Shown: positions 4,047-28,843, numbered from the stretch's first letter. The stretch: DNA of 28,843 nucleotides from Macrostomum lignano (GCA_002269645.1 NIVC01002671.1:1-28843), one strand, 5' to 3'. Made by a program: numbers and translations. The notes: a model not told the origin generated them from the letters alone.

Positions 4047-7000
4047 ATGACAAAGCAAGAGCTGTTCTTTCGAACACTACTTGTATTCGGTGTCGTCTTT
4101 GTAAGTCACAGCTGTTACTTTTTACCTCATTTCGGACTTTGGTGTCTGTCTAAGCATTAATTGTTAATCATTGAGTGTAAGTCAGAGCAAGCACAAAGCA
4201 AATGCAATCCTCTGAAGCTCTCACGAGGCACAGGAGATGAAAAGTTACGAAGATTTTGTTCCGACCTTCCAATTAACATCTGCTTCTCTGCATGTTGTGG
4301 AGCGGCGAAAAGCACAATATTAAAAGTGCACATTTAGCTTAGTTTGTTACGTTAAATATATTTATATATATTCGGAAACGGAAACTGCCGAGTGTAGTTG
4401 ATATAGGAGCCAAAAAGGTTATTCAACTTAACAATTATATTTGCTAACTAACTAAATAAATCTTAAATTCTTTCTTCCACCGATATTTAGCAACTTATTA
4501 CAGCATTGATTAATTACTCTGACGTACAAAGCTGTAGGGTAGGCACAAAACCAAAAACAAAACACAAGGCTAGCGCGGACTCGCTACGAGCACGTAGTTT
4601 AGACTAGAGTCTTAAGGCCGGCTCACATTACCGCTACCAATGTACAGTTGGTTGGCATGCCTAGTCTATGGTAGCTGTTGCTAGCTGGAGCTATTCTGCA
4701 TAGTCTATGGTAGCTGTTGCTAGCTGGAGCTATTCTGCATAGTCTATGGTAGCTGCTGCTAGCTGGTGCTATTCGGCATAGTCTATGGTAGCTGCTGCTA
4801 GCTGGTGCTATTCGGCATAGTCTATGGTAGCTGCTGCTAGCTGGTGCTATTCTGCATAGTCTATGGTAGCTGCTGCTAGCTGGTGCTATTCGGCATAGTC
4901 TATGGTAGCTGCTGCTAGCTGGTGCTATTCTGCATAGTCTATGGTAGCTGCTGCTAGCTGGTGCTATTCTGCATAGTCTATGGTAGCTGCTGCTAGCTGG
5001 TGCTATTCGGCATAGTCTATGGTAGCTGCTGCTAGCTGGTGCTATTCTGCATAGTCTATGGTAGCTGCTGCTAGCTGGTGCTATTCTGCATAGTCTATGG
5101 TAGCTGCTGCTAGCTGGTGCTATTCGGCATAGTCTATGGTAGCTGCTGCTAGCTGGTGCTATTCTGCATAGTCTGCTCGTACTGCATAATTTCTCAAAGC
5201 AGCGATTTTCTCCCGACTATCTAGGTAGGGATCGGCAAACTATTTTACCTTAAGGGCCAGATAGAGAACCTTGCACCGGCCCAGAAGAGGAGGAGAGAGG
5301 AGAGAGGAGAGAAGAGAGAAGAGAGAAGAGAGAAGAGAGAAGAGAGAAGAGAGAAGAGAGAAGAGAGAAGAGAGAAGAGAGAAGAGAGAAGAGAGGAGAG
5401 AGAAGAGAGAAGAGAGGAGAGAGAAGAGAGAAGAGAGGAGAGAGAAGAGAGAAGAGAGAAGAGAGAAGAGAGAAGAGAGGAGAGAGGACAGAGAAGAGAG
5501 CAGAGAGGACAGAGAAGAGAGCAGTGAGGAGAAAAAGAATGTTTAGCGATTTTCTAGACACCTGTTATCTTATGCCTTCAGACAGTGGAGGAAAAAACGA
5601 CAGCACCGAAGATGCTTTTTGTCGTCACATTTTAGATATAAAACCAGCAGTGCCTCTTTGGGCCTCAAGATCGTGTGCGTTCTCTACAACTTCATCCCCT
5701 GCCACCGATGGTGTTGGATACCGCTTAGTTAGCGGGTTTACACAACAGCGCATGCAATCAAATCAGAAATAGACCTGCCCATTACTACGGGGGCGAGGGT
5801 TAGGTGGTTAGCTGGTCGGGGTTGGCCATCAGTCCCGGACGTGCCAGCTGCTCCTCTCAAGGAGCGGCCTCCGCGCCGGGCTCATTTAGAATCCTCCGGC
5901 CGGCCGTGTCGGCCTGTCAACCGTCTGGGTCAACTTTCCGCCTCGCCTTTGAGTCTAAAATGAATGGGAACTGCTGTAGCCTTTCCATGCGCTGCTTGTA
6001 CTATTGTAGACCCTATGAGCTGCATAGAATGCCGCCATATTTCCGAAGTGCGGCTGCGCCTAAAACGCGTAATTTGCATTTTTTCGATGTAGCATAAGAG
6101 TTTACGGTCCCACGCGCATGTTCTTCAGTGTTTCAAATAAAAAGGAGAGACAGTGGAGGCGCTCGCTTCACTTTTCTCTCGCCCGCATTTGCGGGCCTAA
6201 AGGCATGGCCACTGACCGTGCTTCGAGTTCAATTCTTTGTTATCCGACGTGAGCAGAAGGTGCAGGCAGGACGCAAAATCCTACCTGTTACAATGGTTCC
6301 CTGACCTCGTGAGTCTGCTGGACGAAATTCCTGTCACGAAGGATAACAGAGGGTTGAATAGAAGCCAGTTGACGGACAGCACAACATCAACAAATCAGGA
6401 TCCGGCGACCAGAGGACATCTTGCGTCGTTGGTGTGCTTGACGGCATTAAGTCGGAACGGTGGTTCAGTTCAACTGCCACCACGGTGCAGCCGCAGCCCC
6501 AGCTGACGCGTGTTCAACAGCCGTTCGGATGGATCGACAAGAAGAGTCAGCCCCGACGTCACTGTCTCGGCGACCGGCATGCAGATCAATTTTCCTGCCC
6601 TGAGAGGCGATCCGTCTCAAAAGCGGAGCAGTGTTTCGGTCCAAAGGCCAAGAGTCGTCTCTCCACAGCAAGAAGTCTGTGAGGGAAATTTGCGGTGCAT
6701 CCGGAAAGAAGACCGGAGCACGATCGATGCATGCAATGGACATACCAGTCAAGCTACTTAAGATAGCTCACGAGGACTGCATGCCCGCGTTTCCGAGGTG
6801 GCGGACTTCGATGCTGACCCCCTTAGAGCAGCGCGTATTGAGGAATGGTGCGACCCGGCTGGAGGAGTTCAACATTACTATACTAATGGCTGGTATTTTC
6901 AAGTACGGTTCAACTTTCAACAATACTTCGGGGTGTCGAAGTTTTTTGAACCACGGAGGGATATGAGCTGCATAAAATGCCGCCATATTTCCGAAGCGCG

Positions 7001-10000
7001 ACTGCGCCTAAAACTTGCTGCGTAATCTGCATTTTTTCTATGTCCCCCACAAGAGTTGTGGGGCATAAGAGTTTACGTTAACACGCGCAAGTTCTTCAGT
7101 GTTTCAAATAAAAAGGAGAGACAGTGGAGGCGCTCGCTTCACTTTTCTCTCGCCCGCATTTGCGGGCCTAAAGGCATGGCCATTGCCTCGGCTGGGCTGT
7201 AGACCGCAGCAGCCTGGGCCCAGAAATACCGTGCTTCGAGTTCAATTCTTTGTTATCCGACGTGAGCAGAAGGTGCAGGCCGGACGCAAAATCCTACCTG
7301 TTACAGACCCTGCCTGTTTACCCAGCTCTATTGTTCTAGCTTAATTTCTAAGCCCTGAGGGAGAGAGGAGAAGCAGGGGAGAAAAAGAGAGGAGAGGAGA
7401 GGAGAGAGAAAAGGTAGAGCGGAGGTGAGAGAGAACATAACTGAGAAGCGAATTCCGCAATCTGTACTTCTATACTTCTCACCTCGACTTCCGCAATCTC
7501 CCAGGCCGCATGGAAAACTGTCGGCTGGTACTGGTCCGGCAGTCAGAAAATGTCCAGGTCAGTTATTTTGAATCAAGTGCCTTCTGTTGTGCAGCGGCTG
7601 CTGAACCGTGAGCCAAAGAAGCCGCCAACACAGCAGGCTTTGAATCTGTCTCCAACTTCGCTAAAGCTAGTGACGCTAACTGCCAGAACTACACCTACAA
7701 CTCAGAGTACGCGAACAACCACAAGAGCTGCAGTCGCGCCCACAAAGAAAGCTGCACCAGCGTTCAATTCGTCTGCTCGCATACCGCGAATTCTGCACCA
7801 GGCGTTTGCATCCGAGATGGTCTACGAAAACTACCTGCCTTACATTAACGGCTGCATGTCGCTGAACCCGGACTGGACATATTACCTGTGGCGGGACAGC
7901 GACGCGGAGGCGCTGATCAGCTCCGCCTACCCGGAGTTTCTCGCCAAGTACAAAAAATACTCTGACGTGCTGGAGCGGGCCGACTCTATTCGGTACATTG
8001 TTCTGCACCACTTTGGCGGTGAGCGGCTTTGAGGACTTGTTGTTCACCCTGAGCTTTGAGTGCCGAATCGAAGCTGAATCATGCTTAATATAGATGCAAA
8101 ATCGGTCAAATTGGATTGAAAGAAAATACGAGCTATAGCATTTCCCGTATCGACGCACATGAAGTAAAGAAAGAAGCACTCAAGTTCTGCAGGTTGTAAA
8201 GAGCAGGCACTATGGGGTGGCAACCAATTTTCTTTCAGCAGGGTGATCTGTACCTCAGCTCGGTGGACTACTCTCTCATTACCTGCCTATTATGCTGTGT
8301 TACTAACCGTGGTGGTAAATGCGCAATTTGCGCTTTTTTCTAGCGACCCCTGTAGGTTTTGATAAGGGCCCTGCAATCTCAATCGGCTCCCAGGAGTGAC
8401 ATCAGACGTTTTTGTTAAATTGCATCATAGCTCTATGGCTCTTTGACAGTCGCAAATTACAATGCTTCAGGTGTAAACGCATAACAACAACAACAACAAC
8501 AATAACAACAATAAAGTTCGTTGTCAGCCGGTTATGCGAGTCATGAGAGGCAAATCAAATGTATGCATTCACATCTACATAAACTTAAATTTTTGTAAAA
8601 CCGGACACCTAGACTAAGCTTATTTTAGCATAAGCCTAAATGTGACAACAAGTCTGTCAAATGGGGTCGGTCGTCCCTCAGTGGCAGACATGCATCATTA
8701 GGTTTCGTTTTTTTCAGGATCTATTTCAGAGAAAGAATATTTCTGCTATTTGCAGGAATTTACCTGGATATGGACGTACAGTGCGTCAGACCATTCTTCC
8801 CGGCATTGGAGAATCTTAACAGCTTCTTGGACCAGGAGCGAATCGAGCAGACGAACATCTTATGGGGCTGGCCGTTTGGCGTGATGAACTCAGGGATGGG
8901 CTCCGCTCCCGGCCATCCGTTCTTCCGCGAGGTGATCGACGAAATGTTGCGCGAGTCTCGGATTGGCAACGCGTTCACCAGCACGGGCCCGACCATCCTC
9001 ACCCAGGTGTACAAGCGATACACGGCTGCCAAGCATGCGGTGCCGGTCACTATGCTGGAGCCGAAGGTGATGTCGCCCCTCATGGATGGCAACAAGAACT
9101 GGCGCAGCATGTGCGGCTCATTAGGTGAGACCTGTTTTAATTAATTATGCATCGAGTTCTAGGCTGGGGAAATTACTGGTGACAAAAATTTGCGCAGAGC
9201 TCTCAAAACTCGGACTGCTGCTCAAATGTTTTAGTTTTCTATGAATATTTTTTCGTCTCTCATATTGTGACGTTGTTTCCAATTGTCTATGCTTCTAATC
9301 CAATTAAATAAGCCGAAGTTTCGATATGTTTCTCTCGATCTTAGCCTTCAATACGGATGTTTATTTCTAACTGCAATTCCTGATGATTTCAGTTTGAGAT
9401 GGATAATCAACACGCAATTGTTTTAAACAATTCAGAGAAATGAAGAGGGGTTACTAATCCATATTAGTGTACTTCGATCTTGATGTCTCCAGATGGTCTC
9501 TTCGTTGGATCGGGATGCTGGAGTCTTGGGCTCGATTCAAAGGAAGAGGTTTCCGTGTCAGTCTTTTGATTCTAGGTGGGGTTTGATGATAACTCTGGAT
9601 ATTCGTCTGAGCATGCTAGTTTGGACTAGCGAAGGAGCGAAGGAGCGACGGAAGAGGGCGGAGTAGGAGTAGCAGGAGCGGAAAAGGAGGCGAGAGATTC
9701 ATTCTCAGTGAACGCTGGAATATACATGTTTCTATAACGCTTTTTATTGGTGTTCGCGTCACGCAATAGGATATTTAATGCCGCACAAGCATGTGCTGTA
9801 CTTTCCTTCTAAAGTTCACATTAGACTGCAAATTAGCATTGAGCACCACATGTTTCAATTAAGATCACTTACTTTCACTGTGACTTAATTTATAGTCGTC
9901 CAGCGTTTGGGCTTTTTGTGAATTTTGGCTCTCTTCTGACTGAATCTTATCGCTGCAATGCTCAATAACAACAATATCGGTACTGAGGATGGATTGATCG

Positions 10001-11073
10001 GTCGCGAATTAGCCTCTAAAGGTATACTTTTTTCAATATCTCGTTCTTGCATTGCCGAAGCTTTCATTTTGAAGCCTTTAGGTGTCAGCAGCGACGAGCA
10101 GTGCTCGATTGTGATCTAGGGGGGAACGAGTACAGTCTCGGCCGCTTGGCTGTGACTCTCAGTAATAGCAAGCGGAAATATGAATTTCGATTTTTTCCAA
10201 ACCCTTATTTTTACTCTCTCACTGGGTGACAAGATGCGCTAATCTGCTTTCAAAACTTAAAGGTTCGTGCTTAAGGCTCGATAGGCACAGATAGCTGTAG
10301 GCATGCCCTTGCTTCTATTTTTAAAAGCAGCTAGACAACACTTCGTTGACCCTAGCAGATCCTGTGAGCAGGCGTCTACTCAACAGCGAATTAAAACGTG
10401 ATGTGAAATGACACGCGCAGACACGCGCAGAAAACTTTTTACCGACGATTTTCGGCTTGAAAATGTTGCAAGGGGAACAGTTAACCATCGAGCCTATGCT
10501 CAGTTTTACACGTTTTACGAGGACCCAGCACAGGTGCGAATAATGCTTCATCTGGTAGAGTACTTCTCTGCAAAACAATCGATGAACAGCGGGACGGCTG
10601 GGGAGAGAGAAGCAGGATCTAACGCAGGCAGTAGTCGCTATCTCTCGCGTTATTATTTTTCCCTACTGAGCGGCCGTCGCCCGGGCTGGCTGCTCGGGTC
10701 TCTTCTCAAGATACGAGTACTTATAAACGCAGTACAGTGCTTGGCTGGAGAGAGAATTTACTAGCTGGTACTACTAAGTTAGAATCGATTGCATAGTTCT
10801 AATCCAATTCTAATTAATAATTCAATTTTATGCCCCTGCTTTCCAGCTGCAGCCAAATCGAAGCCGGACTCGCGGCGCAGCTGGAAAGAGCGCGGCTGCA
10901 TCATGCTTGAGTCGAAGAACTGGCGCTACGATGACTCGGACAATTCCACAATCTGCGTTCATAGATTCCTTCATCTTGGCTACGGCTCATTCGCCGCGGT
11001 GCGCAAGAAGCCGTTTAACATCACTGCCCGCTTCTGGCCCCGGGTTCGAACTTTCAAACGAAGAGGTAAATGA
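4047..11073 (+). CDS. Glycosyltransferase family 32 (Gly_transf_sug, DXD; SUR1/CSH1/OCH1-like) type II membrane protein, paralog A, about 387 aa
   Basis: Exons 4047-4100, 7505-8018, 8756-9124 and 10847-11073 all have GT-AG sites, compatible phases (0,1,1) and total 1164 nt. N-terminal anchor MTKQELFFRTLLVFGVVF|AAWKTVGWYW. GT32 motifs: IPRILHQ, NPDWTYYLWRD, ERADSIRYIVLHHFG|GIYLDMDV (DXD), NSGMGSAPGHPFF, TGPTILT. Confidence 0.88.
4662..5168. repeat. Minisatellite, 13 x 39 bp (TAGTCTATGGTAGCTGCTGCTAGCTGGTGCTATTCTGCA), in intron 1 of GT32-A
   Basis: 507 bp equals exactly 13 units, with only a few substitutions (CTG/CGG, GTT/GCT, GAG/GTG). Confidence 0.97.
5283..5522. repeat. Purine-rich simple repeat, mainly (AGAGAAG)n; a shorter GA-rich tract lies at about 7357-7440
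   Basis: Directly visible 7-bp unit array. Confidence 0.95.
6014..7305 (+). mobile_element. Non-autonomous LTR retroelement (TRIM-like), 1292 bp, in intron 1 of GT32-A
   Basis: Direct repeats 6014-6292 and 6962-7305 both start TATGAGCTGCAT and end CCTGTTACA. GACCC is duplicated at 6009-6013 and 7306-7310. PBS at 6294-6306; purine tract GGAGGGA at 6955-6961. The 669-bp interior has no recognisable gag/pol motifs. Confidence 0.92.
6294..6306 (+). promoter_or_regulatory. Primer-binding site complementary to the tRNA-Glu 3' end
   Basis: TGGTTCCCTGACC lies 1 nt after the 5' LTR. It is the reverse complement of the eukaryotic tRNA-Glu 3' end ...GGTCAGGGAA-CCA (13-nt match). Confidence 0.85.
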
Positions 11074-13468
11074 CTTAAGGGTCAACGCTGAGGTGATGCA
11101 AGGTGATGCAAGTGCCAAAGTGCACAATGCGAATTCAATGAAAAGCTTTGGAATGTCGAACGAGTAGCTCTTATTATTACAATCCATAAATTTAGTTAAC
11201 AATAATGCCAGTGTTCAGAACATTTCTCCCTCGCAACAAGTGTGTCAAATATTCCTTGTAAACTGTCATTCTGTTTGCTTTTTAAATCAATATTTCGCTT
11301 TTTACTGTTTTTTTCATGGCACCCGTCCCGAATTGACCGAATGGCTTAACACATGGATGTATTACGCTTCAACTCAACGCATCTATATTATTTACTTAGC
11401 ATTATTTAGTGAATGAAAGTAACTGCATCGTTTCTACCTGAGAAAATTCCCTGTTTTCCACTTTTCCACCTGTCGGAGTTTTGCATATTGTTTTATTAAT
11501 TCCGAACAAAAAAGCCCCATAGACGTGGGACAATAAAACGATTTATTTTGAGTTAAACAAGCGATAAAACCTCTTCAGGACTAGGCCTAAATTTTTATCA
11601 TCTCCGTTTTAGTCTAATAGTAAACAGAGCTTACCATAGACCATTTGGCTTCTGACTGAGCCATAGGTATTTTTTCTCTCCGTTCCGATCGGCATGGCAA
11701 GCAATGCTTATCTACAGATTTAGCCGACTAGGGTAGAAAATGAGACAAAACGTACATCTAGTAGTCTGTTACTAGACTGAAAGCACACTGGTCCCTGTAA
11801 AAAAAGGGATGGGCAACACGAACAGTATAAGAAGCGTGCTTTTTCCTAGCCCTTTAACGAACACCTTTCGGCCGCCGCACTTACAGTATACAATCCAAGC
11901 GTTTCGGACCATCTGCAAGCACAGGTGCAAACCACAGATACTATATAACAGATAGTTTCTGGAAGCCAGCATTCGTGAATTCGTGCAGAGCACTGAGATG
12001 ACCAGAAGGCGACCAGCCGCTGCAGCTTAATTAAGCCTTCGGCCAAGTCAGCCCGCACTTTCCAATGCGGATTGCGGCCCGAGAAAGTCAGCCAAGACCA
12101 ACTAAGCGGTGTCGCGTCTGCTACCGAGCTGAAAGAATCATTCGATCAATCTACTGCTGCCCTGCGTGTCCAGGTGAACCGGGACTGTGTCTGGAGACCT
12201 GCTTTCAGCAATGGCATTCTTGAATTTTTGATAGCTTTGGTTCCCGGTGCACGCATGCAGCAGGCAAAATATTTCATGCTATATTCCCTTCTATAGGTGT
12301 GCCTCGAAGAAAATTGAGAAAATGGGCTTCTCACAGTTAGCTTTTTCTTTCTGAGACTATTATTAAATTAAAATCGGATCGGCGCTAACTTCTCAAGTTG
12401 CTAAGAATGTGCTATAAAAATTTGTTGAATGAATGCCAAAACCTAATCGTTTGTATACTTCCGGATGAAATAATATCTTTAGAGAGCTGAGAGACAAGTG
12501 GAAGTAATTTAATAACGTTTAATTTATTCTGTTTATCAATAAATTCTTGTTTCTTTTTCTTCATTTGGAAATCTTGAGCACCTAAACGATCATTAAATTC
12601 ACTAAATAGATGCATTAAATTCAATCCCAAATATTTTTACAAAGTAACGGAGCTTTTGTCTATGGTAGCAAGGCTGGCACAGCAGCATTAATTTGGTCCA
12701 TAGCGTCAATGAAACGCAATCATGATTTGAGCAGATTTCACTGTACCAATACAAGGTGGCTTCAACAATGCGATCTGCGAGAGGGCTGGAGAGGGAGAAG
12801 TAGGATCTAACAAAAACAGTAGTTGCTCTTTCCGGCGTTATCATTGCATAGTTCTAATCCAATTCTAATTAATAATTCAATTTTGTGCCTTCCAGCTGCA
12901 GCCAAATCGAAGCCGGACTCGCGGCCCAGCTGGAAAGAGCGCGGCTGCATCATGCTTGAGTCGAAGAACTGGCGCTACGATGACTCGGACAATTCCACAA
13001 TCTGCGTTCACAGATTCCTTGATCTTGGCTACGACTCATTCGCCAAGGAGCGCAAGAAGCCGTTTAACATCACTGCTCGCTTCTGGCCCCGGGTTCGAAT
13101 TTTCAAATGAAGAAGTAAATTTGACAATAATTGCGTGACTGTCAAGTGCTTAAGCTTCTAGTGATGCCATTTCATAACAGAAAGAAGAAGTGCACAGTGC
13201 AAACTCAATGAAACGCGTTGGAATGTCTCGTTTCTCGTGTTGCAATCCATAAATTTAGTGTGCACGTGTATGTACTGCAGAACAGGAGCAACACTGCCAG
13301 TGTTCAGAACATTTTTCCTGTGCGATAAGTGTGTCAAATAGCTCGTACTGCTTGTCGAACGTAAACAGATTTTGCACTTCTATTGTTTTGTCATTGCACC
13401 TTGATCCATTTTTGACCGGATGGCTTAGCATACACATATTACTATTCATCCGCTCAATGCATCTCTAC
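10596..13468 (+). repeat. Local direct duplication of the GT32-A last exon with flanks: about 10596-11386 and about 12784-13468
   Basis: Shared upstream intron sequence (GGCTGG..GAGAAG.AGGATCTAAC; ATTGCATAGTTCTAATCCAATTCTAATTAATAATTCAATTTT), the exon (95% identical), and a more diverged 3' flank (CAATCCATAAATTTAG, GCCAGTGTTCAGAACATTT, AAGTGTGTCAAATA). Confidence 0.9.
12896..13110 (+). CDS. Duplicated (alternative) terminal exon 4b of GT32-A
   Basis: Same acceptor TTCCAG|CTGCAGCC and same phase as exon 10847-11073. Open frame AAKSKPDSRPSWKERGC...RIFK*. Ten nucleotide differences in 215 nt; splicing it would give a 383-aa isoform. Confidence 0.6.
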
Positions 13469-13479
13469 ATGCGCTTTGG

Positions 13480-13833
13480 ATTTCTACAAGAGCGAATCTA
13501 TCACAGACCTACACCAATCATTGTCTCCGTGCTACGGTTGTCACGACACTAGCAACCAAGGGCATTTCTGTTGGCGACCTTCAATTTGCTACCGGTCACA
13601 AGAGGCCAGAGTCGGTTCAGAGGTACGCAAAGCGGATCTCGCCAGCGAAGAAGCGTCAACTGTCCGATGCTCTGACAATGGATTCTTCACCGCCTGGTCC
13701 AATCGTTAAACGAGTCACGAGCGACGTCCCACTTCAATCGCCTGGTTTTAGCGTTGAGCGTGGCGACCTAAAAGTATCTGCTGTTGACTGCGAACAAAGG
13801 ACTTTAATGGAGTTCTGCCGACTGCAGTGCTAG
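13480..13833 (+). mobile_element. Crypton-type tyrosine recombinase, 5'-truncated C-terminal fragment
   Basis: A start-less frame missed by the ORF track reads ISTRANLSQTYTNHCLRATVVTTLATKGISVGDLQFATGHKRPESVQRYAKR. It has the catalytic HxxR, GH and Y of tyrosine recombinases in the YTNHxLRAT...TGH...Y pattern of animal Cryptons (DUF3504/KCTD1-like). Confidence 0.85.
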
Positions 13834-18025: not shown

Positions 18026-20661
18026 ATGGCTGCAGGCTTCTACAGAGCCCTGCAGTATCCATCTAAACGTTTAACTCTTTTTACAACAATTCTGGTGAGT
18101 GTTTTTTGTTAACTAGTTGACAGGAGGGCTTCGGGCACTGGCACAACTCAACGCAGGTGACAGTTGACCCGTGTAGTGATGATTTTCTTAGAAATGCACT
18201 GGAAGGACTTTCGTTTTTTGTATTGCCAGTGCATTTACACCTTTTTGCGTTCTATTTCGATAAAACTGCGTTCAAGTTCGGCAAACTGGCTTTCATTTTC
18301 GGCATCAGCTATGGCCGCACATCCAAACTGCATTCGAATTCGACAAACTGAGAACAAATTTCGGCAAACTGCATTGTCAAACAATTGCGCTTTTGTTTTT
18401 ACCATAGAAGCGTGCGGCAACGCAATGGGGCATTGCCGCACGCAAAACGGTACGTTTCCGCACGCTTCTATGGTAAAAACAAAATCGTTAGCCAATGATG
18501 TCGACGCACTGCTTTCGAGTGCAGCAACGACCATAGACACTCGTGCGCGGAGTGCGTCATCTCTACATTCAATTTCGCAGCCAGCGCCTCGTGCCACAGA
18601 CTGTATTGAATATTGAATATAGAAATTGAATATCAGTTTTGGGTTTAGATGCGTCTATTTCCATAGACAGTTTGTGGCACGAGGCGCTGGCTGCCGAAAT
18701 TGAAAATACGATGCCGAAATTGAATGCAGTTTGCCGAATTTGAATGCAGTTTACCGAAATTGGTTTTCGGTTTGTCGAATTCAAATGCAGTTTGGATGTG
18801 CGGCCATAGCTGATGCCGAAAATGAAAGCCAATTTGCCGAAATTGAATGCAGTTTGAGCACAGGCTGTTCAGCTGCCCTGACTTTTTCATCTTCAAGAAT
18901 GTATACATTCTGTGCCCTGAGGGATAGAAGTGAATCGAACAGCAAGCATTCAACAACAGTCAGACGCCACCTCCTGGTTGAGAGAAGCTTAGTGGATTAT
19001 ATCGCGTTTCCCGATCCACCAGAATGCCATAGATCTTAGTTTGGCAACATTAGTTCAGAACAACTTCAGGACAGTTAAAGCAGATGTCTTGAACTATAAA
19101 AAGGAAGTTGCCTGCTGACCCTCTGTAGAGCCTCACAGCCTCGTATAGTTGAGGACAGAACTTTTACCCCAGAAAATCGCGGGACATCGACTCCTCAGCC
19201 TTTTAGAAATAAAAAAAATGCTGTAAAAGTTACAGAGACGTCACAAGCTAATTACTGAGCACAGCGCACTATTAAAAAGCAGGCTCATTATTGACCATCT
19301 TCGCCGATTGCTGAACCTGAGCTTTCAGATCGCCTGCCCGCTGATTGTCGGCCTTCTTCATTGGCAGCTTCAGCAACGCCAGTCTCAACCGGGCGGTGCA
19401 GCTCCGTTCCGTCGCCTACTGCACCAGGTGTTCACCAGCGAGCTGGTCTATGAGAACTATCGGCCCTTCATCAACAGCTGTCTATCGGCTAACCCGGACT
19501 TCACCTACGTGCTCTGGCGCAACTCGGACGCGGAGCGCCTGCTGGCAGACAATTTCCCGGACTTGCTGCCAGTGTACAGGGGCTACGGCAGCGACCTGCA
19601 GCGCTCCGATGCGGTCCGATATGCAGCGCTGTATCTCTTCGGGGGTATGCTATTAAGTACACCATTAAGTGCAGTGCAGAAAGGGTGTGAAATTGGCTAC
19701 GCCAATTTCAAATCAGTAGACCTCGGGGATTTTATTGTAAATCTGAACGCTCCATACGGCTCCTTATTTCAATCCTCTTTATATTAGCTAGACATGATTT
19801 TAGAAGACTTTAGAAGACCATATCGGATTCAATGAAGAAAGTAGTCAACCCTATACTGCACAGGTGTCTACCTGGACATGGATGTTCAGTGCCTGCAACC
19901 GCTGACACCTCTCCTAGACAAGGCCTGGCAGATGTCTGCGGCCCTTCTCGACCAGGAGCGGCCGGAGCAGACTCGGATTGTGTGGGGCCGCGCCTTCCTG
20001 ACCATGAACTCCGTCATGGCAGCTCCGCCGCGACACCCGTTTTTCCGGCTGATGGTCCGCGCGCTTCCCGAGCGGAGCGGCGAAGCCTCCATAGTGCACA
20101 GCACCGGGCCGCAGCTGCTCACCAGGAAGTACACCGAGTACTCCCTGGCTGGTAGAAAGCCACCCGTGCTGCTGCTGCCATACGTCCTGTTCTCGGCCTG
20201 GATGAATCCGAATCGAAATTGGAAGGGGCTCTGCAACCACGAGTGTAAGCAGGTCTAAGATCAGACTAGTTTTGAAGCTTTCTGTGCGGCCCGCTGTGCA
20301 TGTAATATTTAAGGTCATTTTAGTTTCAAATGCAGTGACAAAACCATCATCGCTAAGGACAGTGAGCCGCGAGGCGGAAGAAACAGTGACCGGCACGCCG
20401 GAGGAGGTCGAGATTGACCACTGGCGACGACTGGGCTGCCGACAGTTGGCTGCGAAGCATTGGCAACTGGACGAAGTTAACATCAGCCCGGAGGCCGGCC
20501 GTGAAGCCAGTCTGGGAGTCCACAGATTTCTACACTTGGGCTACGAGTTCGCGGCTTCTGAACGAATGCGCCGCTTCAACCTCAGCGAAGCCTTTCCGGG
20601 CCGAGTGGTCTTCTACGATAGGATCGCTTCCGTGCTGGAAGACCACCTTGGTGATGGGTGA
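18026..20661 (+). CDS. Glycosyltransferase family 32 (DXD) type II membrane protein, paralog B, about 363 aa
   Basis: Exons 18026-18094 (Kozak caaccATGg; MAAGFYRALQYPSKRLTLFTTIL), 19329-19644 (IACPLIVGLLHW...RRLLHQ...NPDFTYVLWRN...QRSDAVRYAALYLFG), 19864-20244 (GVYLDMDV...NSVMAAPPRHPFF...STGPQLLT) and 20336-20661 (VHRFLHLGY). Total 1092 nt, phases 0,1,1. Confidence 0.88.
18263..18855. mobile_element. Nested inverted-repeat (fold-back-like) element in intron 1 of GT32-B
   Basis: Outer arms 18263-18375 and 18743-18855 (113 bp, about 90% complementary, built from TGAATGCAGTTTGCCGAAAT-like subunits). Inner arms 18568-18604 and 18667-18704. Confidence 0.85.
18391..18484. mobile_element. 94-bp hairpin MITE with perfect 27-bp TIRs, inside the fold-back
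   Basis: TTTTGTTTTTACCATAGAAGCGTGCGG (18391-18417) is the exact reverse complement of 18458-18484. Confidence 0.8.
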
Positions 20662-21233: not shown

Positions 21234-21722
21234 TCACTCCTCCTTAGCTGCAGCATCAACCCTTTTCGAACTGTGCCGAGCCATGGCGCCGAGAATGCGC
21301 AGATTTGCAGCCAGCAAGAGGCCGTGAACCACAGTCGAGTGCACAAGGTGCCACATCCAGTCGGTGTTGTAGTCGGTCGGCTTGTGCGAAATCAGCACGA
21401 CGAGGGGCGCAACCAGCATCGCCAAGGAGCGCAGCTTGCTGCCCAAGGACACGCTGTCTAGAGTGCAGAATCGCAGCAGAATGGCCACAGCTGACAAAGC
21501 CAGCGGGAATCTGCCGATGTAGTTCTCCATGATCTGCGTGGTGTAGGCATGGTACTCAGTGGGCACGTAGGGCTCCACGTGATCGCCGAGACCGCCAAAC
21601 AGACCGGCAATGTAGCAGGCAGCGAAGAAACCAGGCAGAGCAGGCCAGCTCTTGTAGGCGATGATGGCATTGCTGACTAGGTACCACAGAGTGCAGGCGT
21701 GAAGCCACAGCGGCAGGGCCAT
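21234..21722 (-). CDS. Hypothetical multi-pass (about 5 TM) membrane protein, 162 aa, single coding exon
   Basis: GC3-rich intact ORF with Kozak-like aaccATGg and five hydrophobic segments. Probable 66-nt 5'UTR intron (GTAAGT at 21794; AACAG acceptor at 21729). No family recognised. Confidence 0.75.
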   Translation of the reverse strand: MALPLWLHACTLWYLVSNAIIAYKSWPALPGFFAACYIAGLFGGLGDHVEPYVPTEYHAYTTQIMENYIGRFPLALSAVAILLRFCTLDSVSLGSKLRSLAMLVAPLVVLISHKPTDYNTDWMWHLVHSTVVHGLLLAANLRILGAMARHSSKRVDAAAKEE

Positions 21723-22449
21723 GGTTAGCTGTTTTTAGAAAACAGGCTGGTTACTGTGACTGTTGCTCTTGTTCAGGCCACGATCGAGACTTACTTTTCT
21801 AACCCAGGCAGCCCTTTTATCTGTGCCAACTGAAATGATATGTAAGCTGCAGAAGCATGTTGGTAGAGATCAAAGCGCCTAGCTTGTACGCATGCAAATG
21901 AAAACCTTGTGACGTGCATTATTGTACAGTATCTGACCAGTTTTGCTTTGAATCGCTTGGCTTATATTTTGTATATTTGCATGAATTCAACTTCAAAAAT
22001 ATTTCAATTTTGAGGTAAACTTGATCATTGATTTATAATCATGACTCTTCTTTGTTTTTCATACAATGTACCATGATCTCTATATGCACGTACATACTCA
22101 CTGCTCACTGCAACAAAAAATGATTAAAAAAGCGAAAGCAACACCGAATCGATAAAGTACGTGTAAGCTGGGGGGTACATATAAACTCTTGATTTTACAT
22201 GTATTCAATATACAATTTTTTCGATATCGTAATGCATGTAAGGTCTAATGAGGCCAAATAAAAGTATACTAATCAGATGCTTTGTTAAATGCTACATGTT
22301 CATTTTTCGATTTTCATAGGTTACATGTATAAAAATATGCCCACAGATTTTTTCAAACCCACATGCGCTTCACAGGAAGTCTTAATTCCTTTTTTGGGAT
22401 ACAATCAAAGTTTCAAGATATCTGTACACATCTATTATACATTCTACTC

Positions 22450-22610: not shown

Positions 22611-24234
22611 GTATTGCACAATAAAAATCCGCCATTTTTTGGTTCGCAAGCAATTTCATGTACATGTAGTAATAAGCTATAAACTGAAAGTTGATACCGA
22701 TCAAAATAGAATCGGAGAGTTCTGATAGTATGCATCACATACGTACGTGGCTAAAAGTATAGATGCACTGCAGTATATCATGCAAAATGCAGCATATACA
22801 TGTATGTTCTAGGTTTGAACTTTTGACAGTATATCAGTTTAGATGAGTTTGTTACAGGACCCGAGTCAAAGAAAGTATATTCTATTTTACGTCATGTAAA
22901 ATGCATGTATTCAACTTAACGTTATTCTGAATTGAGAAGAAGACGCAATGTAGCTCGAAGTAATTGTTGAAAAACTATAAATTTTAATTTTTAGAACTTT
23001 AAATTTTCGAAATAACTTAACTAACATGATAAAATATTGAAAATTTCCACATTTCTTTCGTTTCATTAATATGCAATTAGACGGATTGGATGGACTGTAG
23101 TATATTAAAACAATTTTTACTAGCTCCATTCAAGTGAAGCAAAGAAATTTCTATTTACAAGAAAAAATTTAAAATAAAAAAATGCACCCTTATTTCCTAA
23201 AATCCACTAAGTTTTTAATCTTTATCAATTGCATGGCAGTTTTTCTCACGGCGTCCTCCCACCATTTCAGCTTCAAGAAAAATCTATATTAAATTTCGTT
23301 TGCTTTTTCATGTTACTGTTTTTTAGAGATACTCCGCATTTGTATTCGATATTATCAGACAAATAAGTGGATTATCTGGCTGTCGAACTTTTACTTGGAT
23401 ATTGAAACTATCCCCTCGGTTTTTTAACACTGAAGGTTGTGGCTCATATTTATTGTGCGCTTCAAAACTTGTATCTTTTCCTATGGTTTCTGTGCTCATT
23501 AGCTGCAGCTTATATACTTAATAACATTTAAAGAACAGAATGCATACAACGAGACTACGAGAGTAATTGATGCTATAGTAGCAAGTTTTAATTTTAATAT
23601 TTCTTATTGTTTTTTTGCTATCAAACAGTTTTGACTGGTTAGTGACAGCGACAAAAAACGAATAATTTTAACTAAAAAATGCTTGTAGCTTTTGGTTGTA
23701 GGTACGAATTGGATTAAAAATTAACTGCAATGTATTCAATAAAAATAGATAAGCCGATGCTTTATAAGATTGTCAAATAAAGCACTGCATGAATAAATGC
23801 TACTAATGCACACTAATTTCTATTTTTATTGTCTAAAAATTTAATCAAATTTTTCAAAAATTTTGTAATTTGTATAACTTTAATTATAGTTATATAATTC
23901 TTTTAAAGAAATAAACATGAAATTTCAATACTCATGTACAAAATGAGTAAAATTTAATTAAATGTAGCAATAATAATATGTTACTAGCTTAAAGTAGGTA
24001 AATGCGCTTGTATATTTTTTTTTAATTATACCAAATTACAAGCTGAGCTAAAATAGTCTTTTTGTGAGAACTCAGCCGAAATAATTCATCTTAAACCGTT
24101 TTTGTCCTTCTAAACGAGTGAAAAATTTATGAGGTTTAAAGCCAAATATTCTCACTCACTTGTGTGGCTAAATTTCAGATCAAATAAATTTTATTCGAAA
24201 AAAAGTTGCAACAATGCAATTGTAATGTCTGCAG

Positions 24235-27200
24235 TGAAGCTAATAAACTTTGAACATTTCTACAATGAGCTGGAGGTGCAGGAGCAGATCCCGCTTAGAA
24301 AGCTGTTGGTGAGTTTGTACGATTTGATTGGCTCTTTATGTTTGAATGGATGCGGTCAAAGCCTTGTTTTAGCGCAGCGAGTACTATATTTAGAATACTT
24401 ATTTAACATGTATTGCATATTGTATTGCATATTGACAAGGCTTCCTCTAATAATATTTTGGCATTATACCTTCACGCGTGATTATAAAAGCATGCGCACG
24501 CAGTCAATCCGCAGAAGTGATTACGGTAGACTCGCCTGACTGGCTTGATTGCAGAATTTGCTTCTATGAATCAAATTGTACTACTAGAAGTAGTATTGCA
24601 CTTATCGCTGTAGCATTACAAACGATATGAAGGTTAAATAAAGATATATTGAATATAAGATCAGATGGTAAAATTAACGATACAGTTTTCACAATAGCAA
24701 AGATCCTTGGCGTGGATTCTTAAAAGTTTGCTGGTAATAAACAGGATTGGTACCATAAACCTGCATGGTACATCAAACCAGCCATAGACAGTCTACCTGG
24801 TACAATATCGATGCCACAGACCGTCCAACTTACAATATCAATGTCACAGATAGTCAAACTAGTACAATATCAATTTCATAGGCATTCTAACTTGTACAAT
24901 ATCAATGTCGTTGACAGTCCAACTGGTACAATATCAATTTCATGGACAGTCCAACTGGTAACAATATCGATGCCATAGACAGTCCAACTGGTACAATATC
25001 GATGTCATAGACAGTCCAACTGGTACAATATCGATGTCATAGACAGTCCAACTGGTACAATATATCAATGCCATAGACAGTCCAACTGGTACAATATATC
25101 GAGGTCATAGACAGTCCAACTGTTACAATAATGACGTCATAAAAAGTCTAACGGGTATAATAAATGTGCCGTGGACATGCTACATTAACGATCCATAAAA
25201 CCGCCTTACGCAGGCAAAACTACCAACTTGGTTCGGCGAGAAAGGCGTAGAGTTTCACCTTGATTTTGACGGCATAGAACAGCTAACTGATGAGGTGTTT
25301 CACCTGCTGGAAACATCCGTGCCATACGAGGCCAGAGTCCGAGTTGCTCGAGTCTCCTGCGCTGGTTGCCGGCACCTTCGGGATGACGGCATGGCTCACC
25401 TGGCCCGCGCGTTCCCCCGCCTTCAGCAGCTTAACCTTGACGGCTGCCGGCTGCTCACTGAAAGAAGTCTGCATTACCTGGGAAAGCACTGTCGAGACCT
25501 GAAGTCTGTCAGCATGCTGGGCACCGGACTGACACACTGCGGCTCCAGGCAGCTCGGTTTTCAAGTTCTGAGCGATCCGGCGTGTCAGTTTATTGACGGT
25601 GAGTGCCATTGCTTAAGAGCTACTTAACATGAGCAGCAAAAGTGCATGTAGGACGCTGCTACACTCGCAAGTCGAGCTATAAGTTCCAATTAGGAGGTCG
25701 GTTTCGGTAGACTTACACTGTAATAGCTAGACAAAGTGAGGAGAAATCAAATTTGTGCCCGAGGACAACAGGTCATTTAGGGTGGGCTCAAGCAGGACTC
25801 CAGTCCCGAATGATTGTTTCCCAGCTGTTGTGTTAAACATTTGGGCCATGGACTGACAGGTAGCTTTTATAACGGGCTCTGCACGAAAAAATCGACTATT
25901 AACTAGAATATATGCATAGGGAAAAGTTCTCTTAGAATTTTTGCTGCTGTGCCTGTTGTAACTGGGCATCGGATCAAATGTAGCTGCCCTTGGTAACGTG
26001 CATCATATCAGATTACTTATAGAGTTGGGACTATCTATGGAGAGCATTGATCAGACAGGAAAATGTTATGTTGTTTGTAAACGAACATGATGATGTCAGT
26101 TTACTTTGTTAGTTCGCAGTGGGGGCTTTGGGAACTGCCGAAAATCAAGGCGAAATTTGACTACTTTTTTTACCAAGAACCCACTTGCTGTCCCCCACAC
26201 GCCAGGACCGGTGTCCACCACCGCTCGCCTACCAGTGAAGCTGGCCATCATCTGCGACCCGGCCGTAACCGTCAGCATTGGCGCCCTGGCTCTACCAGGC
26301 GCGGTGGGCGGAGCTCAGCCATCTTCCAGCTCCAAGTCGAGGCCGTCGTCCTCAAAATCGGCGGTAACGTCGTCTGTGCAGCCCCCGCCGACTTTTCAAG
26401 CGCTCTCAGCCACTGTTGGCGACCTGGACCTGACTGTGTTCGAGATGCGCGCAGACCTAGTAAATGCACTGGTCAAGTGAAAGGAGTGATAAACTGGGTG
26501 AAGTGAATTCAAGCGTGTTTTGATAGCCTTGCGTGTGCCGATCCCACGAGCAAGCACGGACTGGGGGGGGGGGGTCGCCACACACACACCCCCTCGATTA
26601 CCCCAGCTAATGCTGGCACACATTTTACAGCTGGGTGAACTGAAGAAATGCAGAGTTAAGTGTCAAAACCTAATTCAAAACCTTGTCAAATCTATGAATT
26701 TGTTTAAATAGTTTAGCCTGTGCTTGACCATAGGCATCGCAGATGAGGACGATTTTCAAATGTTTAGAATAGTACTTAGTCCCCAATTACTTTTCGCCAA
26801 ACCCCTTGCTCAGGTGTACAGCTCGCTGTTCATGTCCAACACAGCCGGTTTCGTGCTGGTAGTGGATGCGGAGCGCACAGAGAATCCCCAGCTAGAAATT
26901 ATGCGAATGATTGACGCAGTTCGTGGAGCGGTGAGTCTGACAGATCTGTCCATTTAATGTGCGCTCGTAGGTATTTCACCTTCATTAATCGTCACGCGCC
27001 TCGCCGTCGCAGGTGTTCGAAGCGCCGCTGCTTCTAGTCGCTACGGTGAGCAGCCAGAAAGGGGTTGAGAATGTTGCCTCGCTGAAATCCGACCTGGAAA
27101 ACATGCTCAGGGATCAGGTAGACAACATGAAGGAGCACTTGGAGAAGGAGCACTTAAATAGGTAAGAATAATAGTTTCGTTTTGTGCTCTGAGCAGCCTA

Positions 27201-28843
27201 TCAGATAATCTCTCAGACACGAAATACGCTGCTTCAATCATAACTTCAGTTGCTACGACAAGGACTTTCCGCACCAGTGGCGTTACGTTCAGTCGATTCA
27301 GTGCGCGGATGTGACCCACTTTCCCATCACTTTGGTCGCCGTTCCAGTCGAAGGCTTCAATGAAGACTGGGTGAGCTTCAAATGAAAACTACTTGTATTC
27401 AATAAGACACCTAGGCTCAGAAAGAGACAGATTTTTTAAACCGGAATTTGAATTCAAACATTCTCAGGTATTCGAGACTACACTCCGGGAAGTAAAGGTG
27501 GACTCCAACGTACAAGCTCAAGTGCAGTATTGGGCGGAGCACGATTACGTAAGTTGCTTGTTCGCCATTTGCTTTAGGAATAGACTACTTCAAGTACAGT
27601 ACGGGTACAAGTACTGTAAAACAAATAACAACTGCTTACTTGTTTGTAGATGTTTGCCATTGACGCGTTGGACCGGTGCACCAAGGCGGACTTCATGGAG
27701 GTCAGTGTTAGCTGAATCTGACATGCAATCTGAATCTGAATGCACAGATTATCTTAACAGTTGTAAATGCTTATTCTGTTCTTTCAGTTGCGCTCCCTTT
27801 CGGCTCCGCCGTCCGTCGTAGTGACCACAATGAAGTGCGTTATGCTCATATTCGACATTCCATTCACGGAAGACGACGCCTGGCCAACGGCAAAGAACCT
27901 CGTGTCGGAGACGCGCTTTCTGTTGCGATTCAAGGACACGAATTACATTGTGAGAAACTTGGTGAACTAATCTAAAATTTTCCTGATTCGTCCTTAAGTC
28001 AAACCCAACAAATCCGCTTTCAGACGGAGTCTCTCTCGGGCAGACACGCCAAGCTGTTGGCGGACCTGACCGCCCTTGTTCCAGAGTGGGAGACCTTTGG
28101 AGAAACTGTGAGAGTTGCTTCTTTCTTCTGCGTATTTAATTTATAATTCCTAAAAACAGCGCTCATCTCGCAGGTGAAACGTGGTTCAACATTATCAACT
28201 GCATGTGGCTCTACGTGTACGCGGTGATCAAGTACCTGCTGTTGTGAAGGAGCACGAGCGGGAGCTGAATCCGGCTGGAGCAGCCGCGGCTGAGTCAGCG
28301 GGAATCGAAAAGGAGGTAAAAGTACATTGTGACGTTTAGACTGGCGGGAACTATTGATATTTACTCCACAGCGAATGAGAAATCTATTCTAGGGACTTAT
28401 TACTAACGAGTAGTGCGAAACTAAAATGAGAAACGAATCACAAACAGTAATTCGTTTCAGCAGTCTAACATAACAAAGTTCGTTCCTTGTTTCACTTGCA
28501 TGTAGAATTTAGAGGCTCAGGTGTCAGCATGAGCGTCACTGCTTACCCCTCTTTACTGCTGCGGGTGAACTGTAGCCTTGATGTGCAATTTGCGATTTCC
28601 ACTTCCCTCCTCACCTGTCTACCTCAGAGCAATCGTCTGGCGCGTCACGTGACCCAACTGGCCAGAACAGCCGCCGAGTCGCTGCAGCTGTGGGAGACGC
28701 GTCGCCTCACCGAGTCCAACTGGCAACTGGCTGATCGGCTGAGCGACTTTCTGGCTGCTCAGCAGTCGCAACAACAGCAGCAGCAGTCGTGGCGGCGAAT
28801 CTTCCCACTGAATGTGCTGATGTCTGAGCTGGGCCTGCCGCAG
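24235..28843 (+). CDS. ROCO-like protein (partial, 3' end outside window): RNI-like LRRs, degenerate Roc, dynein MTBD-like insert, COR-like region
   Basis: Phase-compatible GT-AG exons: 24235-24308, 25214-25598 (LDFDGIEQLTDEV; LARAFPRLQQLNLDGCRLLTERSL; CRDLKSVSM), 26113-26459 (KNPL; VKLAIIC; LDLTVFEMRADL), 26814-26930 (VYSSLFMSNTAGFVLVVD), 27013-27161 (APLLLVAT), 27217-27370, 27468-27548, 27650-27700, 27788-27949, 28024-28107, 28174-28315 (needs frameshifts), 28628-end (TESNWQLADRLSDFL...IFPLNVLMSELGL). First exon uncertain, possibly ATGATAT at 21835-21841. Confidence 0.78.
24781..25170. repeat. Degenerate minisatellite, about 12 x 32 bp (GYCATAGACAGTCCAACTGGTACAATATCRAT), intronic in the ROCO-like gene
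   Basis: Units of 30-34 bp; the central copies are most homogeneous and the ends decay. Confidence 0.93.
26497..26664 (-). mobile_element. 5'-truncated CORE-SINE fragment related to 17031-17341, intronic
   Basis: 26558-26664 (GGACTGGGGG...CCCCAGCTAATGC...CATTTTACAGCTGGGTGAACTGAAGAAATGCAGAGTTAAGTGTC) aligns with about 17141-17245. The tail-side sequence differs. Confidence 0.8.

What the first reader, a model, noticed from the sequence alone, without database searches (positions are those of the whole stretch)
27650..28246. Dynein microtubule-binding domain inserted inside a ROCO (LRR-Roc-COR)-like protein
Seen: four consecutive exons encode MFAIDALDRCTKADFME|LRSLSAPPSVVVTTMKCVMLIFDIPFTEDDAWPTAKNLVSETRFLLRFKDTNYI|TESLSGRHAKLLADLTALVPEWETFGET|..WFNIINCMWLYVYAVIKY. 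Known: the dynein heavy-chain stalk tip/MTBD (Pfam MT, PF12777) consensus is roughly AL..L.K.DI.E.KS...PP..V..VM.AV..LL....W..AK..L....FL..L..FDKD.I...LC.WV.A...Y, and these residues match in order and spacing. There is no AAA ring here. The segment follows Roc strand 5 (APLLLVAT) and a short coiled coil, and COR-like sequence resumes right after it (28628 onward: ESNWQLADRL...LNVLMSELGL). Inference: an exon-shuffled ROCO scaffold carrying its own microtubule-docking module, possibly ciliary. I know of no described protein with this architecture, though I cannot search for one.
Basis: partly seen in the sequence, partly recalled or inferred. Interest (0 to 1): 0.9.

Follow-up and report, generated by a model that had tools for sequence, protein, structure and literature searches.

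The report
Dynein microtubule-binding domain in flatworm ROCO gene
A Macrostomum (flatworm) gene for a giant LRR/ROCO-family protein really does carry a domain copied from the microtubule-binding tip of an axonemal dynein, with no dynein motor attached; I found no description of this combination, but in this copy of the gene the last exon of the domain is frameshifted.

Summary
The core observation holds. Twelve GT-AG exons on the + strand (24225-28843) form one reading frame. Exons 8-11 (27650-28315) encode a homolog of the dynein stalk tip/MTBD. Against all PDB sequences, DNAH6 scores E=1.8e-6 with the window sequence and 3.4e-9 with an intact paralog, and the top 14 hits are all dynein heavy chains aligned at their MTBD. 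No AAA module is present.

The window is a third, 95-98% identical copy of a Macrostomum lignano locus. An RNA-seq-derived GenBank model of one paralog (1755 aa) joins exactly these exons.

- Exon 11 in the window lacks two single G's, so the in-phase reading stops at 28225-28227. Both paralogs are intact.
- The N-terminal LRR is FBXL-type, not ROCO-type.
- The 'Roc' next to the MTBD has no G motifs and no sequence hit. The only support is a weak GTPase-fold hint.
- The 'COR' after the MTBD rests on one sub-threshold Pfam COR-A hit.

A canonical LRR-Roc-COR-A-COR-B module does exist about 13-22 kb downstream in a paralog. The monogenean ortholog's gene model also contains it.

Verdict: a real, constrained (pN/pS 0.10) and apparently undescribed domain combination. 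Microtubule binding is inferred, not shown.

The parts
24225..24308 (+). Exon 1. Start codon and MSAVKLINFEHFYNELEVQEQIPLRKLL, phase 0 end, GTGAGT donor.
   Evidence: Identical to the N-terminus of the paralog model P0151.
24783..25162 (.). A 32-nt minisatellite (about 11.8 copies) inside intron 1.
25214..25598 (+). Exon 2. FBXL-type (cysteine-containing) leucine-rich repeats.
   Evidence: FBXL2 E=2.8e-17 and FBXL17 E=6e-11. The top 150 representative hits are dominated by this LRR.
26206..26459 (+). Exon 3. Start of the GTPase-like ('pseudo-Roc') domain: strand KLAIICD with no P-loop, a Ser-rich loop, then LDLTVFEM with no DxxG.
   Evidence: Splice phases. No Roc or Ras hit. Conserved at 26-29% identity in Cichlidogyrus P0003.
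26814..26930 (+). Exon 4. GTPase-like domain (GFVLVVDAE...).
27013..27161 (+). Exon 5. Strand APLLLVATVSS (no NKxD) followed by a long helix (SLKSDLENMLRDQVDNMKEHLEKE).
   Evidence: low-confidence secondary structure.
27250..27370 (+). Exon 6. End of the GTPase-like domain (ITLVAVPVEG...).
27468..27548 (+). Exon 7 (phase 0-0). Short ascending helix equivalent to stalk CC1 (DSNVQAQVQYWAEHDY).
   Evidence: The Pfam MT alignment starts here at profile position 87.
27650..27700 (+). Exon 8 (phase 0-0). MTBD helix H1 start (AIDALDRCTKADFME).
   Evidence: Aligned to DNAH6 ALDSLDKADISE.
27788..27949 (+). Exon 9 (phase 0-0). MTBD core, about H1-H4: LRSLSAPPS..., WPTAKNL, RFLLRFKDTNYI.
28024..28107 (+). 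Exon 10 (phase 0-0). Middle helices of the MTBD (LLADLTALVPEWETFGET).
28174..28315 (+). Exon 11. Last MTBD helix (WFNIINCMWLYVYAVIKY) and the start of descending CC2. In this window it is 142 nt instead of 144. Single G's are missing after 28181 and next to 28244. The in-phase stop is at 28225-28227.
   Evidence: Alignment with L002 and L003. Frames.
28628..28843 (+). Exon 12 (runs off the window). CC2 continuation, a poly-Q stretch, then the first residues of the COR-A-like segment (RRIFPLNVLMSELGLPQ).
   Evidence: The Pfam MT alignment extends to profile position 289. The sub-threshold COR-A hit starts here in the paralog.

Best explanation
The window holds the 5' third of one copy of a Macrostomum lignano gene for a very large multidomain protein of the ROCO family.

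Domain order from the N-terminus:
1. A few FBXL-type LRRs.
2. A small-GTPase-like domain that has lost every nucleotide-binding motif.
3. A helical hairpin whose tip is a dynein-derived microtubule-binding domain, most similar to axonemal inner-arm DNAH6.
4. A divergent, possibly COR-like region.
5. A long flatworm-specific middle part.
6. LRRs.
7. In the paralog and in the monogenean ortholog, a canonical Roc-COR GTPase module.

Shown: homology of the hairpin tip to the dynein MTBD; its in-frame splicing into this gene; absence of any AAA motor; purifying selection on the exons.

Inferred: the hairpin works as it does in dynein, as a tubulin-docking knob on a short antiparallel coiled coil. 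The CC1 equivalent is only about 25 residues, far shorter than dynein's stalk. This would tether the ROCO scaffold to microtubules, perhaps axonemal ones. The cassette of phase-0 exons probably came from an axonemal dynein heavy-chain gene by exon shuffling.

The copy in this window carries two 1-nt deletions in the last MTBD exon. They are either residual assembly errors or a very recent inactivation of a redundant copy.
For: - The exon model has no stops and GT-AG borders. It equals P0151, a model from an RNA-seq-based annotation.
- MTBD homology: DNAH6 E=3.4e-9, with the 14 best PDB hits all dynein heavy chains aligned at their MTBD; z=14-23 against shuffles and 45.9 bits to a dynein-only HMM; 32% identity to DNAH6 over the domain.
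- No AAA domain or any other dynein part was found.
- pN/pS is 0.10 between the window and L002 over 616 codons. Within the MTBD exons the count is 6 synonymous to 2 nonsynonymous.
- Canonical Roc, COR-A and COR-B lie downstream in L003.
- The Cichlidogyrus locus is collinear, with a Roc-containing model. There the stretch that follows the M. lignano stop codon is in the same ORF as the preceding LRR.
- Exons 7-11 are all phase 0-0.
- Foldseek hits from the AF2 model are mostly small GTPases, including LRRK1 and LRRK2.
Against: - Pfam MT is below its gathering score.
- Both AF2 models are low confidence (pLDDT 39 and 36.5), so there is no structural confirmation of the MTBD fold.
- The CC1 equivalent is very short, and the arginine of dynein's 'WVRA' in the last helix is replaced (MWLYVYA). 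Tubulin affinity may therefore be altered or lost.
- In Cichlidogyrus the positionally equivalent linker shows at best a marginal MTBD signal. It scores 15.4 bits to a mixed HMM, above all 300 shuffles, but only 3.9 bits to a dynein-only HMM and gets no PDB or Pfam hit.
- The M. lignano annotation ends the ORF before the canonical Roc-COR, so one-protein status of the two halves is not shown in this species.
- The window copy is frameshifted.
Confidence: 0.6

Rival explanations
1. The copy in this window is a decaying duplicate (pseudogene). The two deletions in exon 11 are real and truncate the protein inside the MTBD, while function is carried by the intact paralog(s).
For: - Two single-base deletions lie 63 nt apart in one exon, and none occur in the other ~1,700 coding bases.
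- M. lignano DV1 has large recent duplications, with 180 Mb in blocks of at least 95% identity (PMC5730564).
- Paralog L003 also has indels in exons 4-6.
Against: - pN/pS of 0.10 shows the copy was under purifying selection for nearly all of its divergence.
- Both deletions are GG-to-G, the typical residual error of a long-read assembly.
- The older assembly's model P0001 is riddled with such shifts.
Confidence: 0.3
2. The MTBD-like hairpin is a relic that no longer binds microtubules. It serves as a helical spacer or protein-protein interface between the GTPase-like and COR-like parts.
For: - The stalk equivalent is very short and some basic residues of dynein's last helix are lost (alignment).
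- The Cichlidogyrus ortholog keeps a helical linker of similar length but almost no MTBD signature.
- Pfam MT is below threshold.
Against: - Signature positions of the tubulin-facing helices are retained: ALD..KAD..E.R..., PP and WPTAK.
- Nonsynonymous change in these exons is low.
Confidence: 0.3
3. This is a gene-model artefact. The MTBD exons are a fragment of a dynein gene or pseudogene nested in an intron of an unrelated LRR gene.
For: Only that gene prediction in this repeat-rich, duplicated genome is error-prone.
Against: - All junctions are in phase with canonical splice sites.
- The same joins appear in an RNA-seq-derived model.
- No other dynein sequence lies within 28 kb.
- Only 32% identity to DNAH6, together with pN/pS of 0.10, argues for a long-resident, constrained part of this gene.
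Confidence: 0.03

Closest known systems
Dynein heavy chain stalk tip / microtubule-binding domain (Pfam PF12777 MT), closest to axonemal inner-arm DNAH6
   Same: The match is collinear over the whole globular MTBD, from the first helix to the last, and runs into the descending coiled coil. Shared signature positions are ALD..KAD..E.R, PP..V, WPTAK, FL.R and CMW. Identity is about 32%, with E=3.4e-9.
   Different: No AAA+ ring, linker or tail is present. The coiled coil on the N-terminal side is about 25 residues instead of about 100. The score is below Pfam's gathering threshold. The host protein is an LRR/ROCO scaffold.
ROCO proteins (LRRK2, LRRK1, MFHAS1, prokaryotic Roco)
   Same: A canonical LRR-Roc-COR-A-COR-B lies on the same strand downstream in paralog L003. 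The Cichlidogyrus ortholog's gene model also includes LRR and Roc. LRRK2 is known to associate with microtubules through its Roc-COR-kinase-WD40 half (general knowledge, not tested here).
   Different: Known ROCO proteins have no dynein-type MTBD. I found none described in two literature searches. The domain next to the MTBD lacks all G motifs. The N-terminal LRR is FBXL-type. No kinase or death domain was seen in the sequence available.
F-box/LRR (FBXL) proteins such as FBXL2 and FBXL17
   Same: Exon 2 encodes about three cysteine-containing LRRs, with E=2.8e-17 to FBXL2.
   Different: No F-box was detected, and the rest of the protein is unrelated.

Membership tests
Dynein stalk/MTBD (PF12777 MT) | Score at or above the Pfam gathering threshold (24 bits) | tested here: not met
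   18.7 bits with the window-derived peptide and 16.2 bits with the intact paralog peptide.
Dynein stalk/MTBD (PF12777 MT) | Significant, collinear sequence homology to the globular MTBD of bona fide dyneins | tested here: met
   DNAH6 E=3.4e-9, and the top 14 PDB hits are all dynein MTBDs. z=14-23 and 45.9 bits to a dynein-only HMM.
Dynein stalk/MTBD (PF12777 MT) | Long antiparallel coiled-coil stalk (CC1 and CC2, about 100 residues each) flanking the MTBD | tested here: inconclusive
   The Pfam alignment covers profile positions 87-289 of 344. The upstream helix is only about 25 residues before the GTPase-like domain. The AF2 secondary structure shows long helices after the MTBD but at low confidence.
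Dynein stalk/MTBD (PF12777 MT) | Insertion between AAA4 and AAA5 of a dynein motor ring | tested here: not met
   No AAA or dynein domain appears in the window's spliced product or in the 1755-aa paralog protein.
Dynein stalk/MTBD (PF12777 MT) | Binds microtubules | not testable with these tools
   Needs co-sedimentation or cryo-EM.
ROCO (Roc-COR tandem) | Roc GTPase with G1-G5 motifs directly upstream of the insert | tested here: not met
   No Roc or Ras hit in Pfam or PDB, and no BLAST similarity to the gene's own Roc. By direct reading there is no GxxxxGK[ST], DxxG or [NT]KxD in M. lignano or Cichlidogyrus. The only hint is a set of Foldseek hits at E=0.01-0.1 to small GTPases from a pLDDT 36.5 model.
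ROCO (Roc-COR tandem) | COR-A/COR-B directly downstream of the insert | tested here: inconclusive
   Pfam COR-A E=0.0037, 17.6 bits against 35.3, with no COR-B hit. hhalign E=0.06 on the same motif. No PDB hit with the sequence or a two-species profile. Not above shuffles with a three-sequence COR-A HMM. The Cichlidogyrus counterpart has no hit.
ROCO (Roc-COR tandem) | A canonical Roc-COR tandem somewhere in the same gene | tested here: inconclusive
   Present on the same strand about 13-22 kb downstream in paralog L003 (Pfam Roc 1.3e-15, COR-A 1.2e-25, COR-B 1.4e-20; LRRK2 1.3e-21). It lies outside the window and beyond the annotated stop of P0151/P0002. In Cichlidogyrus the predicted 1563-aa protein includes Roc, and the junction is one ORF.
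FBXL-type LRR proteins | Cysteine-containing LRRs plus an N-terminal F-box | tested here: not met
   The LRRs are met (FBXL2 E=2.8e-17). No F-box hit appears in Pfam.

The most novel reading that the evidence does not exclude
The protein is a tandem ROCO: a degenerate N-terminal LRR / pseudo-Roc / COR module followed by an active LRR-Roc-COR. A dynein stalk and MTBD has been grafted at the Roc-COR junction of the first module. Conformational changes of the Roc-COR dimer, rather than an AAA+ ring, would shift the coiled-coil registry and gate microtubule affinity. That would be a G-protein-controlled, motor-less 'dynein foot'.
Probability: 0.12. Interest if true: 0.85.

Novelty: new variant of a known kind. 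Interest (0 to 1): 0.6.

Why it matters
To my knowledge the dynein MTBD is regarded as a part found only in dynein heavy chains. A constrained copy spliced into a motor-less ROCO/LRR scaffold would show that it can act as a portable microtubule-docking module. It would also give a natural, minimal stalk-MTBD unit for study.

The case also touches the much-studied link between ROCO proteins (LRRK2) and microtubules. Here evolution appears to have solved microtubule attachment with a borrowed dynein part. M. lignano is transgenic- and RNAi-tractable, so localisation (cilia or cytoplasm) and loss-of-function tests are feasible.

The caveats are that everything is in silico, the family seems confined to flatworms, and a clear MTBD signature was found only in Macrostomum.

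Tried and rejected
- Three word-indexed homology searches found only the M. lignano proteins P0001 and P0002. The Cichlidogyrus ortholog was missed, so the taxonomic spread could not be mapped.
- The exhaustive representative search with the N-terminal 589 aa gave only M. lignano proteins, one Cichlidogyrus protein and then FBXL LRR proteins. No other animal has a recognisable ortholog of this part among 1.84 billion representatives.
- Single-sequence AF2 of the hairpin gave pLDDT 39. AF2 of 817 aa with a three-row alignment gave pLDDT 36.5. Neither gave a usable MTBD model.
- The COR-like region and a two-species profile of it found nothing in PDB.
- BLASTP of the N-terminal module against the canonical Roc-COR was not significant.
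- The Cichlidogyrus linker gave no PDB or Pfam hit and no pairwise similarity to the M. lignano MTBD.
- P0001 could not be located on any contig. Its source name 'FSA_C domain-containing protein' has no Pfam support.
- Two literature searches found no ROCO protein with a dynein MTBD and no non-dynein MTBD carrier. A third, for ROCO in flatworms, returned no paper mentioning Schistosoma.
- I rejected the idea that the upstream 'Roc-like' strands are a degenerate dynein AAA4. No AAA similarity exists, the upstream exon is an FBXL LRR, and the fold hits are small GTPases.

Full report
**What is in the window.** Base composition, short GT-AG introns and the homology hits show a eukaryotic, flatworm sequence. 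On the + strand I reconstructed twelve exons:
- 24225-24308
- 25214-25598
- 26206-26459
- 26814-26930
- 27013-27161
- 27250-27370
- 27468-27548
- 27650-27700
- 27788-27949
- 28024-28107
- 28174-28315
- 28628 to the window end

All have AG/GT borders and compatible phases, and they give an open frame through exon 10. The finding's four segments are exons 8-11.

**Source and independent gene models.** The only close database relatives are Macrostomum lignano proteins. P0001 is a frame-scrambled model from an older assembly. P0002 (1371 aa) is 98% identical. P0151 (1755 aa) is a member of the P0002 cluster.

P0151 reproduces my exon model exactly, including the first exon MSAVKL.... Its contig (L002, NIVC01003833.1) and that of P0002 (L003, NIVC01003779.1) are 94-98% identical to the window at the DNA level. 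The window is therefore a third copy. This fits the published 180 Mb of duplicated blocks at 95% identity or more in this assembly (PMC5730564).

That paper also states that the GenBank annotation derives from StringTie/TACO transcript assemblies with TransDecoder ORFs. The joins in P0151 are therefore transcript-based.

**Frameshift in the window copy.** Exon 11 is 142 nt here and 144 nt in L002 and L003. One G is missing after 28181 and one next to 28244. Read in phase from exon 10, the window gives a stop at 28225-28227. No other coding indel separates the window from L002.

Between these two copies there are 16 synonymous and 5 nonsynonymous differences in 616 codons (pN/pS 0.10). In the MTBD exons the count is 6 to 2. 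The copy therefore evolved under constraint. The two GG-to-G losses are either residual long-read assembly errors or a very recent lesion, and I cannot tell which. L003 shows indels in exons 4-6, which explains why its model starts at exon 7.

**Is it a dynein MTBD?** Yes, at the level of homology.
- phmmer against every PDB sequence puts DNAH6 first. E=1.8e-6 with the window-derived peptide and E=3.4e-9 with the intact paralog.
- The 14 best hits are all dynein heavy chains. Every one aligns at its stalk tip, from the first MTBD helix into CC2.
- Shared signature positions are ALD..KAD..E.R, PP..V, WPTAK, FL.R and CMW.
- Shuffling gives z=23, 14 and 18 against DNAH6, a Chlamydomonas inner-arm dynein and a third PDB dynein heavy chain (9y6s). 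A three-sequence dynein-only HMM scores it at 45.9 bits.
- Identity to DNAH6 is about 32%.
- Pfam MT is the only family matching this stretch but stays under its gathering score, at 16-19 bits against 24.
- Axonemal dyneins score much better than cytoplasmic dynein, which points to an axonemal donor.

There is no AAA or other dynein domain in the window product or in the 1755-aa protein. Both AlphaFold attempts were of low confidence, so the fold is not independently confirmed.

**The flanks.** Exon 2 is an FBXL-type LRR (FBXL2 E=2.8e-17), not a ROCO LRR.

Exons 3-6 have a strand-helix rhythm like a small GTPase, but no P-loop, DxxG or NKxD. They give no hit in Pfam or PDB, and none against the gene's own Roc. 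From a poor AF2 model (pLDDT about 50 in this part), the Foldseek top 50 is nevertheless about 80% small GTPases (Arl, Arf, Rac, and the Roc of LRRK1 and LRRK2), at E=0.01-0.1. That is a hint, not proof.

After the MTBD, the first ~70 residues are the descending coiled coil. The Pfam MT alignment reaches profile position 289. Then comes LLKKLHQMGKLLFFPEG..VVLDLAWF, which gives a sub-threshold Pfam COR-A hit (E=0.0037). The same motif is the best BLASTP and hhalign pairing with the canonical COR. PDB searches and a small COR-A HMM give nothing above chance. 'MTBD between Roc and COR' therefore remains a reasonable but unproven reading of the immediate neighbourhood.

**The gene is nevertheless ROCO.** Downstream of the annotated stop of P0002/P0151, on the same strand of L003, lie:
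- an EF-hand-like loop and more LRRs;
- a textbook Roc (KLMFVGLGGAGKT, DFAGQ, THCD);
- COR-A (FLHDMGSLQHF...NPQWL);
- COR-B.

The scores are Pfam E=1.3e-15, 1.2e-25 and 1.4e-20, and LRRK2 E=1.3e-21. The annotated stop sits in a (GGC)n tract where a second frame stays open.

In the monogenean Cichlidogyrus casuarinus, the N-terminal homolog P0003 (26-29% identity) is followed, after a 100-N scaffold gap, by a 1563-aa model. That model is collinear with P0151 and contains LRR_14 and Roc. There the stretch homologous to the M. lignano post-stop ORF is in the same ORF as the preceding LRR. This favours one long protein, but it is not shown for M. lignano.

**Age of the insertion.** The Cichlidogyrus linker at the equivalent position has a similar length and is probably helical. 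It has no PDB or Pfam hit and no pairwise similarity to the M. lignano MTBD. An HMM built from the M. lignano MTBD plus three dyneins aligns it collinearly across the domain at 15.4 bits, above all 300 shuffles (maximum 6.2). A dynein-only HMM gives only 3.9 bits. The cassette could be ancestral and eroded in the parasite, or specific to Macrostomum. This is unresolved. Exons 7-11 are all phase 0-0, as expected for a shuffled cassette.

**Mechanism.** Shown: a constrained, dynein-derived MTBD sequence on helical flanks inside a motor-less LRR/ROCO scaffold. Inferred: it docks the scaffold on microtubules as the dynein stalk tip does. The stalk is very short (about 25 residues on the ascending side), and some basic positions of the last helix are changed. 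Affinity and any registry-based regulation are therefore open. Because the adjacent GTPase-like domain has no nucleotide-binding motifs, any switching would have to come from the distal canonical Roc-COR.

**Novelty.** Two full-text searches found no ROCO protein with a dynein MTBD and no non-dynein carrier of this domain, and a third on ROCO in flatworms found nothing relevant. I rate it a new variant (a new domain combination) of known kinds, of moderate to high interest. The limits are the purely computational evidence, the narrow taxonomic range seen so far, and the frameshifted state of this particular copy.

Noticed in passing
window 333-1019 (+): An ORF with a Myb/SANT-like DNA-binding domain (PF13873, E=6e-8), probably transposon-derived.
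   Followed up: partly
window 7445-9141 (+) and 19227-20255 (+): Two paralogous genes for DXD-motif glycosyltransferases (PF04488, E=9e-8 and 6e-7). Their downstream exons are similar (GIYLDMDVQC...). This looks like a local tandem duplication.
   Followed up: partly
window 13429-13830 (+); repeats at 10783-11164 and 12823-13135 (+): A tyrosine-recombinase fragment (PF00589, E=1.7e-6). Upstream of it lie two near-identical ORF-bearing repeats about 2 kb apart, possibly a Crypton/DIRS-like element.
   Followed up: no
window 24783-25162: A 32-nt minisatellite of about 12 copies (84% matches) inside intron 1 of the ROCO gene. The flanking 22-24.7 kb region is very AT-rich (GC 0.27-0.36).
   Followed up: partly
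window 4626-5564 (both strands): Long tandem repeats that read as open frames (RLCRIAPASSSYH repeated; EERREKRE repeated). These are probably satellite DNA, not genes.
   Followed up: no
window 21237-21734 (-): A 166-aa ORF with several hydrophobic segments (membrane-protein-like) and no Pfam hit. It lies between the glycosyltransferase gene and the ROCO gene.
   Followed up: partly
L003 14515-14900 and L001 10301-11593: The annotated stop of the M. lignano models lies in a (GGC)n tract. An EF-hand-like loop (DVNNDKILQAQE) and more LRRs follow in another frame. In Cichlidogyrus the homologous stretch is in the same ORF as the preceding LRR. The M. lignano models are probably truncated.
   Followed up: partly
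L003 762-1318: Paralog L003 has five indel positions in exons 4-6 relative to the window. Different copies therefore carry different frameshifts, from either assembly error or decay of redundant copies.
   Followed up: partly
P0151 residues ~1030-1500 (outside the window): A long middle region conserved with Cichlidogyrus at 24-38% identity (for example YPYLHHKLRxYCRGECF and Cys-rich motifs). It has no Pfam family and appears to be a flatworm-specific module of unknown fold.
   Followed up: no
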